DNA of 64,000 nucleotides from contig NC_068994.1 of assembly GCF_001194135.2 (NCBI RefSeq), forward strand, positions 28,353-92,352. The letters are read 5' to 3'. Of the stretch, positions 29,524 to 33,251 are shown in pieces (position 1 is the stretch's first letter; each line of letters starts with the position of its first letter). The stretch is from Octopus bimaculoides (Eukaryota). The position numbers were made by a program, and so were the translations under genes. The notes below the pieces were generated by a model that saw only the letters and a list, made by a program, of their open reading frames with translations, was not told where the DNA came from and did not search any database.

Positions 29524-32500
29524 AAGAAGAAGAAGAAAACAACATTTGAAGAAACTTACTTTGTGTTTGATCAGTGATGAGATAAGCAAAAACTTGCACA
29601 AGATTCAGACCAAGCAGGATTTCATTTTCTGCCCACTGTCTGTTAAAGATCCAATTGGAGCCAGTTGCTACCAGCTCTTCTGTTTGTATCTGTGCTACAA
29701 TCGAACTATTCACTGAAATATATATGACACATCTTCTGTTCAGAATGCCATTGATTCTCCCTTCTCCAATCTCCACACATCCCATAAATAAACCCTCATC
29801 ACTACCACCAGTAACAACACAAATATCTTTTGATTGGAGTTCAGTCAAATTTGATGTTTCTTCTTTGATATTTGTTATTAGAGCAAATCTGGCTGGACCT
29901 GGTGGACCACACACCTGAAGAAATTTAGTGACTTTATCCACTTCAAATTTCCATTCACTGCGATGAATGCAACCCTCTCCAAAACTCTCAGACAAAAGTA
30001 ACACCCGAGTGGTTCCTTTGGACAATGTGATTAAATATACAGATGCTGAAGTTGCATCTTGCTGGCCACAAGAATGAGAACAGAGTGCAATTAAGGATGC
30101 ATGAGGGAGACAGTACGAAAATTCAATCAATTTGGAATGCAAAGAGCCATCATGGTTTGATACAAAAATGGTTTTTGCCTTATTATTGTTGTTGTTAAGA
30201 TTTTCTTGGTTATGATATAAACTATAAACAGAGTGTGTACAGCCTTTCACCAACAGTTGACCACTTGAATTAACAGAAAACTCCCACTGATCTTCACCTT
30301 TAATGAATGACTTCTGAAATATATTTCCTTTGTGCCCACTGCGGATGAGATAACATGCACTGACAACTGTGTTTTCTTGAAGGGCACTGCAGATAATGAG
30401 GCTGCAGCCACCTCCATGAATCTTATCATAACAACCATTTACATTGAGTGGGCAATTAGTATATTCTTCACAATCATCGCTTCCTTTAAACACGAAGCCA
30501 TGTCCACAATGTCCATTGACTTTCCAGTTTGACAATAACATCACATGATTTGATCCAGAGAAGCAGTCAACAACGAGTTCTCCATTCTCATTAGTTATAA
30601 AACTATTAGCCGGGATTAAATGACCTGTATTAAAGGTAATTAAAAAAAAAAAGAAAAAAAAGAAAATTAGTATATGATTCAATAATTGGTAATAATGATT
30701 AATTATTAGCAGTGATGACAGCAACAACAATAATGAAGTAAAACTACATGATGATGCCGTCTTGGCCCTCAAGTTCTTTCACCATCTGTTTCACATAATT
30801 TTTTGAACCTAGCACATTTATACTTCTTTGCATTTCTGAAATCACCTTTATTGTAAACTACTTTCACTCTGATTCAAAAGTTGGGTCAAGTAATCAAAAA
30901 ACTCTACATTGACTACAATTGTGCCAAGTTGTTTAGAGGTCACACAAAAGCCCAAATTTATACCCAGTATGCTGAACTGAACAATCACTGAGCTAACTTT
31001 TTTGTTAATAGTTTTAACCCCCCCCCCCCNNNNNNNNNNATTTTGACCCTGTCAGCTCCATCCATTGCACTCAATCTCACTTTACTGTAAAACATCACAT
31101 TTCCTTCCATGTAATTTCCTCAGTCTTCTATTGAGCATAATGTACTACTGAACTCAGACCACTCAGTCAACTGCTTACCCATTCAACAATTCATCAATTT
31201 CTAACCCATAACCCAAACATCAGCATCTGTTTCTCTTACAAAATCTTGAACCATTATATTCTTTATGGCAATTAAACTCATTCAGTTCTTCTATGGATTA
31301 ATTTGTGCCAAAACTTCACTATATTCCATTAGTAACTATGTTGTTAATCATATTAAATAATATTATGTTTGTTAATTTATTAATTATTCAAACAATGTAA
31401 TGTTAATTGTGATAATTATATAAATAACTAGCTGATGTACCGAAAAAGCAGGGCTTATCCCTTGGTTCAGTTCTCTTGATTCGCTAATCCAATAACAACA
31501 ATACAAAGTATGTAGCCCTTAAAATGTTTTTTTATGTACTTACAGAGAATATCGAATTGTCTCACATAGGATCTTATTTTTAGGAATTTCTAATAAGTTA
31601 TGAATAGGCAAATTGTGAAGTCAGTTATGTAATAACATGAAATTAGTTACCCAATAGTAAGAATTCAAATGAAGTAGCCCTGTAAAGGTCTTTAATGTGT
31701 ATAGAACTTAGGTGTATATAGAACTTAGGTAGAAATACCAATAAGGCATATATACCAAAATCGTGAAGCATGTTATGTAATAACAGGCTAATCAGATATG
31801 AGATAATAACAATGCAAAGTAAGTAACTCTGAAAAGGGCTTTTGTGCATTCCCAGAGAATATAACCCTTAGGGGCGCTAGTGTTGAAATAAATTTACAAT
31901 GGATATAGAAACAGACTGACATTTAACTTTACAGTAGACATACAAATAAATTTGCATATAGATTTTAAAATAAAATAACATGTAGATTATCAATACATTT
32001 ACAACACTTACAAATATAACAGGTAAATAATAAATACCTGATGATTTGGTGAATCTTATTAAGTTTGCAGAGCTTCTTGATAAACAACATTTTTGGTCTT
32101 TCCTTGTGGGGCATTAATAAACAAATGATTAGGATTGCCAACTCTTGAGCATCTCACATAAAGTTGGACATCGGAGAAAACTGGTTTGACAAGGTTCAGA
32201 CCTACCACATCCAAGGACTGCCACTGGGCCTTGTTAATGCTCAGTTTCAATGGGAATTGCAGGTGCTTGTACTGAAAAGGCATATCCAAGGGAATAAGTG
32301 GAATTCTAGGAATCAATACAGGCTCACCGCTTGCTTTACCAGTCAAAAACTGTTGGCATTATCTTCTTTATGCCAACAGTCATGTGCCATGGCAAAACTT
32401 TGGTGGACTGAGGCCTAAAATTCACTATGCCATATGCCCATGGGCATATGGCGTAGTGGTTAAGAGCGCGTGCTACTAACCCCAAGATTCTGAGTTCGAT

Positions 32501-33251
32501 TCCAAGCAGTGACCTGAACAATAATAATAATAATAATAATGATAACATCGAAAAATACCTTAGGAATGAGAACCCAGGTTCGAAATTTCCCAAGACACCT
32601 GAAGAAGGCTGGAGGGTATATCAGCCAAAACGTTGTGTTAATAACAAACAAGATGAGGAGAAATATCCGTCGAATGTAAATAATGTACTTAATTATGTAG
32701 TTGATAATTATAGTGTTTGAAGTAAACTTACCTTGATAACTTTGAACTATTGAGACTACTGCAAAATGATTGCAATTGAAGCCAGAACGCAGCAGAAATA
32801 TCTGTGCTGTGGTGTTGGACCCTTCTGAGCCATAAGCATTTGATATGAAGACGAGAGAGCAACAGCCACCGTAATGGCTATTGATATTGAACTTCAATGG
32901 AGCATAGCAACGTATGGGCCATTTGCTTTGGGCTGATGACCACAGGCAGCTATATTGTACTAAAAAAGATGAAGAATAAATTACTAGGGGATGCCATCTG
33001 CAAGAAAAATGATAAAGTTATATGTATAAAACCTCATTAGTTATGCGTTAAAGAAAATATAATATTAATTAGTGTCTAGTGATTAGAGAATCACTAATTA
33101 GCTGTACAATAGTCTATAAGAGTAGGCATGAAAAATGGCACATTTTACTTGACTGAAATAAATTGCTCAGATCAAGCTGATCTGCAATCAAAGGTATCCA
33201 GTCTTATTTTCCAGACATGCTATATACATATACATATATATATACATATAC

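What the first reader, a model, noticed from the sequence alone, without database searches (positions are those of the whole stretch)
29560..32959. Unassigned tandem about 90-100 aa beta-rich, Cys/Gly-rich repeat (three clear copies, one divergent)
Seen: R1 NINSHYGGCCSLVFIS..TTAQIFLLRSGFNCNHF..FITNENGELVV..LLSN; R2 NVNGC..GGGCSLIICS..VSACYLIRSGHKGNIF..WEFSVNSSGQLLV..LYHN; R3 HASLIALCS..TSASVYLITLSKG..WKFEVDK..FLQV..LITN; plus a more diverged fourth unit. I cannot name the family. Its position next to two lectin domains suggests a further ligand-binding module (inference).
Basis: partly seen in the sequence, partly recalled or inferred. Interest (0 to 1): 0.7.

Follow-up and report, generated by a model that had tools for sequence, protein, structure and literature searches.

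The report
Phage tail-fibre tip, tripled, in octopus-like NLR
Two exons of an animal immune-type (NACHT-TPR) gene encode three tandem copies of a small beta-sandwich that otherwise occurs once, at the far tip of bacteriophage tail fibres; no domain database names it, and it sits beside two sugar-binding domains.

Summary
The repeat is real, but it has three copies, not four. It lies on the minus strand in two exons (32959-32732 and 30624-29560). The intron between them holds the N gap, so the gap does not touch the reading frame.

Family profiles show units 1-3 are homologous to each other (hhalign 87-98%). The "fourth unit" is an unrelated small beta-sandwich (<1%).

No Pfam, NCBIfam or PDB sequence match exists. 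An exhaustive HMMER search found about 90 relatives. The complete ones are roughly 1,900-aa proteins with this order: MGxxxS N-terminus, this module, Malectin, FBA, DUF4062, NACHT, NPHP3-type TPR.

The same search also found phage and bacterial tail-fibre and tailspike proteins. These carry exactly one unit, always at the extreme C-terminus (Roseobacter phage CRP-345 gp50, six IMG/VR contigs, one Elusimicrobia MAG). A profile of the phage units matches animal units 1, 2 and 3 at 99.3%, 98.9% and 97.9%.

The AlphaFold models are confident (pLDDT 86 and 90). Their best Foldseek matches are phage tailspike C-termini and T4 gp9.

My best reading is that three fused units replace the homotrimeric phage fibre tip and act as a recognition head in a membrane-anchored cytosolic STAND sensor. 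The homology is shown. The three-fold packing and any ligand binding are inferred.

The parts
42051..42155 (-). Candidate first coding exon: MGCSPSSMPAQTEKSQNKAKSKLSTSQASNQLEDM, followed by a GTGAGA donor. The MGxxxS start is an N-myristoylation-type motif, with Cys3 as a possible palmitoylation site.
   Evidence: Sequence read. Relatives start MGCSASQ, MGCGTSH, MGCGSSQ, MGSGGSR and MGTKVSK. Lipidation itself was not tested.
34767..34947 (-). Exon 2: low-complexity linker (DPLAVDVRRKPFDSPHSTESLS…MEFNQMQD), ending in phase 1.
   Evidence: tblastn with P0004 gives 87% identity. Splice sites were read, and the phase fits exon A.
32732..32959 (-). Exon A: a pre-strand plus the first two thirds of unit 1 (…KWPIRCYAPLKFNINSHYGGCCSLVFISNAYG…SIVQSYQ).
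   Evidence: The acceptor is TTTTTTAG and the donor is CAAG|GTAAGT. This exon is missing from the public model P0004 of a close relative.
30625..32731 (-). Intron that splits unit 1. It contains the N gap 31030-31039 (preceded by a poly-C run) and repeat and transposon debris.
   Evidence: No long ORF crosses the gap, and the spliced product is collinear with its homologues.
29560..30624 (-). Exon B: the end of unit 1, then unit 2, unit 3, a linker and unit 4. The donor is CAAA|GTAAGT.
   Evidence: It is 94% identical to P0004 over 359 aa.
30521..32909 (-). Unit 1 (residues 17-110 of the 430-aa product), interrupted by the intron. Seven beta-strands.
   Evidence: The phage-unit profile matches at 99.3%, E 2e-20. 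The phage-only HMM hits residues 23-108 at 3e-14.
30203..30469 (-). Unit 2 (residues 128-216).
   Evidence: The phage-unit profile matches at 98.9%, E 3.4e-17. The single-unit AF2 model has pLDDT 90.4.
29864..30145 (-). Unit 3 (residues 236-329). The window protein has GPARF where the family has GPCRY.
   Evidence: The phage-unit profile matches at 97.9%, E 4.9e-13. U2-U3 is 98.4%.
29576..29818 (-). Unit 4 (residues 345-425): a separate seven-stranded beta-sandwich (CLATG…G.V.I…V.GWV…GL.LVRVFA). It is not a copy of the repeat.
   Evidence: hhalign gives <=1% against U1-U3 and against the phage units. There is no Pfam or PDB match. It is joined by a low-confidence linker at 333-343.
14981..24208 (-). 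Four downstream exons (about 24208-24044, 20480-20334, 17605-17510 and 15283-14981) that encode the Malectin domain and a linker.
   Evidence: tblastn with P0005 and P0004. Pfam Malectin scores 26.9 bits against a cut-off of 23. Exon ends are approximate.
7809..11853 (-). Four exons (about 11853-11677, 10361-10272, 9756-9628 and 7925-7809) that encode the FBA (F-box-associated, glycan-binding type) domain.
   Evidence: Pfam FBA scores 102.5 bits, E 2.9e-29. Exon ends are approximate.
852..1973 (-). Two exons (1973-1857 and 1019-852): a linker and the start of DUF4062. The gene then runs off the window start towards its NACHT and TPR parts.
   Evidence: DUF4062 scores 18.1 bits on this exon alone, which is below the cut-off. 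Relatives P0004, P0005 and P0007 continue into DUF4062-NACHT-TPR.

Best explanation
WHAT IT IS (shown). The region is two minus-strand exons of a multi-exon animal gene for an NPHP3-like STAND (NLR-like) protein. The domain order is:
- an MGCxxS N-terminus and linker;
- this ~420-aa module;
- Malectin;
- FBA;
- DUF4062;
- NACHT;
- TPR.
The module consists of three tandem ~90-aa seven-stranded beta-sandwich units followed by an unrelated fourth beta-sandwich. Each of the three units is homologous over its full length to a domain that occurs once per chain. That domain sits at the extreme C-terminus of tail-fibre and tailspike proteins of phages, and of a few bacterial fibre-like proteins. No database names it.

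HOW IT MOST LIKELY WORKS (inferred). Phage fibres and spikes are homotrimers, so their tip is built from three copies of this domain. The animal protein supplies the three copies in one chain. I therefore expect a single-chain pseudo-trimeric 'fibre tip'. The N-terminal lipid anchor would hold it at the cytosolic face of a membrane. Together with the malectin and FBA lectin domains, I expect it to form a recognition head, most plausibly for glycans or microbial surface polymers exposed in the cytosol. Occupancy of that head would then control NACHT-driven oligomerisation and DUF4062 signalling.

ORIGIN (inferred). The unit was acquired from a phage or bacterium and was triplicated before the animal lineages sampled here diverged.
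For: Gene structure.
- All splice sites are canonical and all exon phases are compatible.
- The intron-containing structure and the fusion to eukaryotic exons exclude contamination.

Family and architecture.
- The exhaustive hmmsearch found 93 representatives with E<1e-3.
- Pfam on the long members gives FBA, DUF4062, NACHT and NPHP3-type TPR, and also Malectin.
- The window's own downstream exons encode Malectin and FBA.

Repeat. hhalign on the family sub-alignments shows three homologous units.

Phage link.
- Single-unit hits were significant against 1.84 billion proteins (E 2e-6 to 9e-4).
- Those hits are PHROG tail fibre or tail spike proteins with the unit as their last ~90 residues.
- Further examples are Roseobacter phage CRP-345 gp50 'putative tail fiber protein', six IMG/VR contigs and one Elusimicrobia MAG fibre-like ORF.
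- The phage-unit profile against animal units 1, 2 and 3 gives 99.3%, 98.9% and 97.9%.
- An HMM built only from phage units finds three hits in animal proteins, one in phage proteins and none in the Big_13 protein.

Fold.
- AF2 of the whole module gives pLDDT 86.2 and pTM 0.79. AF2 of the single unit gives pLDDT 90.4.
- The top PDB matches are all phage tail proteins: 6e1r, 6c72, 9f4a, 1qex and 7xy1, with TMq 0.47-0.58 for the first five PDB chains (6e1r A and B, 6c72, 9f4a, 1qex) and 0.37 for 7xy1.
- 18 BFVD hits have E<=1e-3, nearly all of them caudoviral tail or baseplate proteins.

Rigid body. A pTM of 0.79 for 430 residues cannot come from one 90-aa unit. It implies that several units are placed confidently relative to each other.

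Triplication. Phage units are nearer to U1 than U1 is to U2 or U3. In a rough midpoint-rooted NJ tree, U1 and U3 each form position-specific clades across species, but U2 does not.

Literature. Tailspikes are trimers, and their C-terminal domains act in host recognition or in folding and trimerisation (PMC9137491).
Against:
- The Foldseek E-values against solved structures are weak (>=3.9e-3), and TM 0.47-0.58 is only borderline for 'same fold'.
- No binding site, ligand or conserved surface patch was identified. The most conserved motifs (NVN..GG, Y.IR.G..N, G.L.V) are shared with phage units and look structural.
- In canonical NLR logic the N-terminus is the effector and the C-terminal repeats are the sensor, which argues against a sensor role for this module.
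- The function of such C-terminal domains in phage depolymerase spikes is itself poorly understood (PMC9137491).
- The direction of transfer is inferred only from distribution and copy number.
- The taxonomic spread in animals is known only from this cephalopod-like window, one named sea-urchin protein and unnamed assemblies.
- N-myristoylation is a motif match, not a test.
Confidence: 0.5

Rival explanations
1. Structural or scaffold role only. The three units keep the phage domain's folding and trimer-core role. They form a rigid, inert platform that spaces or orients the malectin and FBA domains relative to the membrane anchor, and they have no ligand of their own.
For: - The motifs conserved between phage and animal units are Gly/Asn turn and core-strand motifs, typical of structural conservation.
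- Some fibre C-terminal domains serve folding and trimerisation rather than binding (PMC9137491).
- The high pTM suggests a rigid body.
Against: - Each unit position shows strong position-specific conservation across distant animals, including loops: GHFG in U1, GEDxWxF in U2 and GPxGPCRY in U3. That is more than a spacer needs.
- 330 residues is a lot for a spacer.
Confidence: 0.25
2. Effector role. As in other STAND/NLR proteins, the N-terminal region is the output. On NACHT oligomerisation, the clustered, lipid-anchored beta-sandwich bodies act on the membrane or recruit downstream factors. The TPR array is the sensor.
For: - The general NLR/STAND layout has N-terminal effectors and C-terminal repeat sensors (established knowledge).
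- The MGCxxS membrane-anchor motif is directly upstream.
- The TPR array is at the C-terminus of relatives.
Against: - DUF4062 already occupies the position next to NACHT that effector or adaptor domains usually take.
- The neighbouring Malectin and FBA domains are binding modules, not effectors.
- No similarity to pore-forming or enzymatic folds was found by Foldseek.
Confidence: 0.15
3. A generic Ig-like or bacterial Big-type adhesion repeat, whose resemblance to phage fibre tips is coincidental.
For: A 3,123-aa bacterial Big_13/Big_6 protein (P0060) was hit 18-19 times by part of the animal profile.
Against: - Each P0060 match is individually insignificant (iE 3e-4 to 1), and they span the U2/U3 boundary rather than a unit.
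- The phage-unit HMM does not hit P0060 at all.
- No Big or Ig Pfam family matches any unit.
- The phage-unit profile matches cover full units at E 1e-13 to 1e-20.
Confidence: 0.03
4. An artefact: phage or bacterial contamination, a mis-join across the N gap, or a dead pseudogene.
For: - There is an assembly gap inside the finding.
- Transposon debris lies in the introns.
Against: - Unit 1 is split by a GT-AG intron, and all four 5' exons have compatible phases.
- The reading frame is open throughout.
- The sequence is 94% identical to the protein of a close relative and collinear with a transcript-derived relative.
- The units are fused in frame to Malectin and FBA exons.
Confidence: 0.02

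Closest known systems
C-terminal (distal) domain of phage tail-fibre and tailspike proteins. Sequence relatives: Roseobacter phage CRP-345 gp50, IMG/VR tail-fibre ORFs, P0089 and P0094. Nearest solved folds: Acinetobacter phage tailspikes 6E1R and 6C72, and the T4 gp9 C-terminal domain 1QEX.
   Same: - Full-length sequence homology of each unit (hhalign 98-99%).
- Shared motifs: NVN..GG, L.L.S, Y.IR.G..GN, FSV..sG.L and a terminal ..N.
- A seven-stranded beta-sandwich whose best structural matches are these phage proteins.
   Different: - In phages there is one unit per chain, at the very C-terminus of a trimeric fibre or spike.
- Here there are three units in tandem, near the N-terminus of a cytosolic animal STAND protein, split by an intron. 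Each position has its own conserved loops.
- The solved structures are only fold-level neighbours (TM about 0.5-0.6, no sequence match in the PDB).
NPHP3-like STAND NTPases (DUF4062-NACHT-TPR 'NLR-like' proteins of invertebrates; vertebrate nephrocystin-3).
   Same: - Relatives carry DUF4062, NACHT and NPHP3-type TPR (Pfam TPR_NPHP3, NPHP3_N and NPHP3_hel hits, all below their curated cut-offs) and an MGxxxS N-terminus.
- From memory, human NPHP3 is N-myristoylated.
   Different: - The roughly 900-aa N-terminal extension (three fibre-tip units, unit 4, Malectin, FBA) is not part of nephrocystin-3.
- The NACHT and TPR part lies outside this window.
Cytosolic glycan sensors built on FBA (FBXO2, FBXO6, FBXO27) and malectin-type carbohydrate-binding modules.
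   Same: The same gene encodes bona fide Pfam FBA and Malectin domains directly after the module, so the module sits in a run of binding domains.
   Different: - There is no F-box.
- The FBA and malectin domains are attached to a STAND ATPase instead of an SCF ligase or an ER membrane anchor.
- The fibre-tip units show no sequence or fold similarity to either lectin.
Single-chain pseudo-oligomers made by tandem duplication of a homo-oligomeric domain (a general evolutionary pattern, for example double jelly-roll capsid proteins replacing pairs of single jelly rolls).
   Same: The copy number (three) equals the oligomeric state of the phage parent assembly. The units have diverged from one another more than from the phage unit.
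   Different: The pseudo-three-fold packing is not verified here. It is an analogy, not a membership.

Membership tests
Phage tail-fibre/tailspike C-terminal tip domain (unnamed family) | Sequence homology across the whole ~90-aa unit | tested here: met
   Profile-profile scores are 99.3%, 98.9% and 97.9% for U1, U2 and U3. The phage-only HMM hits U1 at 3e-14 and U2 at 2e-9. In the reciprocal direction, the animal profile found the phage proteins at E<1e-3 in 1.84 billion sequences.
Phage tail-fibre/tailspike C-terminal tip domain (unnamed family) | Beta-sandwich fold like the C-terminal domains of solved tailspikes and T4 gp9 | tested here: inconclusive
   The top six PDB hits for the single unit are all phage tail proteins, with probability 0.99-1.0 for the first five and 0.63 for 7xy1. 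However, E is >=3.9e-3 and TMq is 0.47-0.58 for the first five (0.37 for 7xy1). BFVD gives 18 hits with E<=1e-3.
Phage tail-fibre/tailspike C-terminal tip domain (unnamed family) | One copy per chain, at the extreme C-terminus of a fibre or spike protein | tested here: not met
   All 16 phage or prokaryote examples have one terminal copy. The window protein has three internal copies near the N-terminus.
Phage tail-fibre/tailspike C-terminal tip domain (unnamed family) | Three copies packed round a three-fold axis | not testable with these tools
   The model coordinates are not returned. Only the pTM of 0.79 suggests a rigid multi-unit body.
NPHP3-like STAND NTPase (DUF4062-NACHT-TPR) | DUF4062, NACHT P-loop NTPase and TPR array in one protein | tested here: inconclusive
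   In the window only the first DUF4062 exon is present (18.1 bits, below the 24.7 cut-off). The 94%-identical P0004 and the full-length P0005, P0007 and P0030 carry all three. The rest of the gene lies outside the window.
Malectin (PF11721) | Pfam gathering score reached | tested here: met
   26.9 bits against 23, on the concatenated downstream exons of the window. P0018 scores 34.4 bits.
FBA, F-box associated region (PF04300) | Pfam gathering score reached | tested here: met
   102.5 bits against 32.4, E 2.9e-29.
Bacterial Ig-like repeats (Big_13 / Big_6) | Significant match of a unit to a Big Pfam model or to a Big-repeat protein | tested here: not met
   There are no Big hits on 40 units. 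The matches to P0060 are individually insignificant and absent with the phage-unit HMM.
N-myristoylated proteins | Met-Gly start with a small residue at position 6; lipid actually attached | not testable with these tools
   The motif is present in the window (MGCSPSS) and in 6 relatives. Attachment needs an experiment.

The most novel reading that the evidence does not exclude
An animal NLR-type innate immune sensor has domesticated a bacteriophage receptor-binding fibre tip. It fused three copies into one chain so that the trimeric tip forms without trimerising the whole protein. It uses this tip, next to malectin and FBA, to recognise bacterial surface polysaccharide or exposed glycans in the cytosol. 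The animal would then detect bacteria with the device phages use to find them.
Probability: 0.2. Interest if true: 0.9.

Novelty: new variant of a known kind. Interest (0 to 1): 0.68.

Why it matters
This work gives an origin and a fold to a roughly 330-aa region that no domain database names (Pfam, NCBIfam and PDB return nothing, and PHROGs returns nothing for the unit itself). The region belongs to a family of large animal NACHT-TPR proteins.

It also defines an unnamed C-terminal tip domain of uncultured-phage tail fibres.

If the pseudo-trimer and recognition-head readings hold, this would be a clear case of a phage host-recognition module transferred into animals and rebuilt as a single chain inside an immune-type STAND receptor. 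That would bear on how invertebrate NLR-like repertoires acquire new specificities.

It would also provide a compact, monomeric version of a trimeric phage tip for structural and binding studies.

On a practical level, the public gene model of a close relative omits exon A and so truncates unit 1.

Tried and rejected
Searches that returned nothing.
- Pfam, NCBIfam and PDB sequence searches on the 430-aa product, on 40 single units and on unit 4.
- The word-indexed protein search found only 2-5 relatives, and none with the unit profile. The exhaustive HMMER search was what opened the family.
- Whole-module Foldseek against the PDB gave no hit at E<=1e-3. The single-unit search improved the TM-scores but not the E-values.
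- Literature searches for this architecture, or for a phage-fibre domain in animal NACHT proteins, found nothing relevant.

Ideas tested and dropped.
- A fourth repeat copy: rejected by hhalign.
- A link to bacterial Ig-like Big_13 repeats through P0060: rejected.

Scans with limited yield.
- GTDB genome scans: the first alignment was too diverse, a narrow pattern found nothing, and a second pattern found one Elusimicrobia MAG.
- An IMG/VR scan with animal-type patterns found nothing.

Things I could not do.
- I could not identify the organism behind assembly GCA_022702875.1, or behind the Logan and JGI contigs.
I re-ran it without that row.
- I looked for the model coordinates to test three-fold symmetry, but they are not exposed.
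Full report
LOCATION AND THE ASSEMBLY GAP

The window is eukaryotic: 36% GC, with introns, microsatellites, and LINE and mariner debris. The finding lies on the minus strand and corresponds exactly to two exons.
- Exon A is 32959-32732. It has a TTTTTTAG acceptor and a CAAG|GTAAGT donor.
- Exon B is 30624-29560. It has a TTTAATACAG acceptor and a CAAA|GTAAGT donor.

The N run at 31030-31039 sits in the 2.1-kb intron between them. It follows a poly-C run, and the surrounding sequence is full of stop codons. Splicing A to B gives an open 430-aa product. Its junction (…VQSYQ-G-HLIPANSF…) aligns without any insertion or deletion to two relatives. One is a transcript-derived cephalopod protein, P0001. 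The other, P0002, encodes the whole region in a single ORF. What the gap hides is therefore intronic and does not affect the finding.

Upstream exons fit in phase.
- Exon 1 is 42155-42051 and reads MGCSPSS…LEDM.
- Exon 2 is 34947-34767.

IS THE REPEAT REAL?

In the single sequence, R1 against R2 is clearly above chance (z=5.1, 0 of 300 shuffles). R2 against R3 is marginal, and R4 matches nothing.

With a 19-sequence family alignment, profile-profile comparison gives:
- U1-U2 97.2% (3.5e-11);
- U2-U3 98.4% (5.5e-15);
- U1-U3 87.1% (4e-6);
- U4 against any unit <=1%.

So there are three copies, with a core of about 90 aa and a period of about 110 aa, followed by a different domain.

The window protein is unusually Cys-rich (5.1%). 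Only three of its cysteines are conserved in the family.

THE GENE IT BELONGS TO

Pfam, NCBIfam and PDB sequence searches return nothing for the module. The exhaustive HMMER search found 93 representatives at E<1e-3. The complete ones (1,884-1,964 aa) carry the module at about residues 100-525. Downstream they have Malectin, FBA, DUF4062, NACHT and NPHP3-type TPR repeats. Most of them start MG[CST]xxS.

tblastn maps the same downstream exons in the window. Their concatenation scores Malectin 26.9 bits and FBA 102.5 bits. The gene leaves the window at the first DUF4062 exon.

One relative is named: an uncharacterised sea-urchin protein. P0004 is 94% identical to the window, and its gene model skips exon A.

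THE LINK TO PHAGES

Among the weaker but library-wide significant hits are short or fibre-like proteins that contain exactly one unit as their last ~90 residues.
- P0089 matches PHROG tail fibre families and has GNVGIGT repeats.
- P0094 has a pectate-lyase region and matches a PHROG tail spike family.
- Several others are unit-only fragments.

The same placement is seen in other collections:
- GenBank: Roseobacter phage CRP-345 gp50, 'putative tail fiber protein';
- six IMG/VR contigs, some of which match PHROG tail fibre families;
- one Elusimicrobia MAG ORF of 881 aa.

A profile of these phage units matches animal units 1, 2 and 3 over their full length at 99.3% (2e-20), 98.9% (3e-17) and 97.9% (5e-13). 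It does not match unit 4.

An HMM built only from phage units finds three hits in the window product and in most complete animal members. It finds one hit in every phage or prokaryote protein, and none in the Big_13 protein P0060. That last result removes the Ig-repeat lead.

Phage units are closer to U1 than U1 is to U2 or U3. In a rough midpoint-rooted NJ tree, U1 and U3 form position-specific clades across species, but U2 does not. This fits one acquisition and an old triplication.

STRUCTURE

AlphaFold2 with the family alignment gives an all-beta model with pLDDT 86.2 and pTM 0.79. Each unit has seven strands, and confidence is low only in the linker before unit 4. A single unit modelled with 40 animal and phage units gives pLDDT 90.4.

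Foldseek finds no solved structure at E<=1e-3. Even so, the top hits for both models are phage tail proteins:
- Acinetobacter phage tailspikes 6E1R and 6C72;
- Klebsiella phage KP1 and Kp9 tail proteins;
- T4 gp9, with TMq up to 0.58.

In the BFVD library, 18 hits reach E<=1e-3, and almost all are caudoviral tail-fibre, baseplate-wedge or virion proteins.

Unit 4 has no sequence relatives in Pfam or the PDB.

MECHANISM

Shown:
- three fibre-tip-type units in one chain;
- an MGCxxS start;
- Malectin and FBA directly downstream;
- a STAND ATPase beyond them.

Inferred:
- Phage fibres and spikes are trimers whose C-terminal domains serve host recognition or folding and trimerisation (PMC9137491). 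I therefore expect the three fused units to rebuild the trimeric tip as a single-chain pseudo-trimer. The pTM of 0.79 requires several units to be placed rigidly, which is consistent with this. I could not inspect the coordinates.
- With a lipid anchor on one side and two carbohydrate-binding domains on the other, the most economical role is a recognition head of a membrane-associated cytosolic sensor.

The rivals are a purely structural platform and an N-terminal effector in the usual NLR sense. Neither is excluded.

NOVELTY

The unit has no name in Pfam, NCBIfam or the PDB. PHROGs matched only the fibre bodies, not the unit. I found no paper describing it or this architecture.

It is a new variant of known kinds, namely the phage fibre tip domain and the NLR-like STAND protein. 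What makes it unusual is the single-chain triplication in animals.

Noticed in passing
window 44658-53930 (+), with the 100-N gap at 44442-44541: The plus strand carries the C-terminal helical and TPR exons of a paralogous NPHP3-like gene (41-65% identical to P0005 residues 1502-1952). They start right after a 100-N scaffold gap and point towards the 5' end of the minus-strand gene. This is either a truncated paralogue or a scaffold join that may be inverted.
   Followed up: partly
protein P0004 (public model of a close relative) against window 32732-32959: The 94%-identical public protein model joins the exon 2 equivalent directly to exon B and omits exon A. It therefore lacks the first two thirds of unit 1. 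This is probably a gene-model error.
   Followed up: partly
window 26700-29115 (+): A LINE-type retroelement remnant (Pfam RVT_1 3.8e-10, zf-RVT 3e-4) lies in the intron between exon B and the first malectin exon.
   Followed up: partly
window 3562-3987 (-) and 4533-4943 (-): A mariner-type transposase fragment (Transposase_1, 1.3e-24) and a second reverse-transcriptase fragment (RVT_1, 1.2e-7) lie in the intron between the FBA and DUF4062 exons.
   Followed up: partly
window 32062-32358 (-) and about 32430-32500: Inside the intron that holds the gap there is an ORF fragment (…QWQSLDVVGLNL…VQLYVRCSRVGNPNHLFI…) that looks, from memory, like the C-terminus of a Helitron/PIF1-type helicase; Pfam gave no hit. 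Next to it is a tRNA-like stretch (…GTGGTTAAGAGCGCG…GGTTCGATTCC-like) that ARAGORN does not call. It is probably a SINE.
   Followed up: partly
window 29497-29537 and 31020-31029: A (GAA)n microsatellite starts about 20 bases 3' of the exon B donor. A C10 homopolymer directly abuts the 10-N gap and is the likely cause of the read drop-out.
   Followed up: no
window about 29891-29893 (residue 320 of the product): The window protein has Ala (GPARF) where nearly all relatives have the conserved Cys of the unit 3 motif GPCRY. Its closest relative, P0004, shares the Ala.
   Followed up: no
BFVD hits (A0A1X9VNQ1 Mimivirus AB-566-O17; A0A481YT56 Marseillevirus LCMAC102): Two giant-virus proteins appear among the structural neighbours of the unit. 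The Mimivirus hit covers 110 columns at rmsd 2.8 Å with E 6.7e-4; the Marseillevirus hit is weaker (E 2.4e-3, rmsd 27 Å over 325 columns). Giant viruses could be a route between phage-like and eukaryotic genes.
   Followed up: no
L007 3911-4264 and L008 3929-4285 (IMG/VR contigs): In two viral contigs the unit stands alone in a stop-to-stop ORF of about 117 aa rather than at the end of a long fibre gene. This suggests a separately encoded tip protein or an unrecognised upstream join.
   Followed up: no
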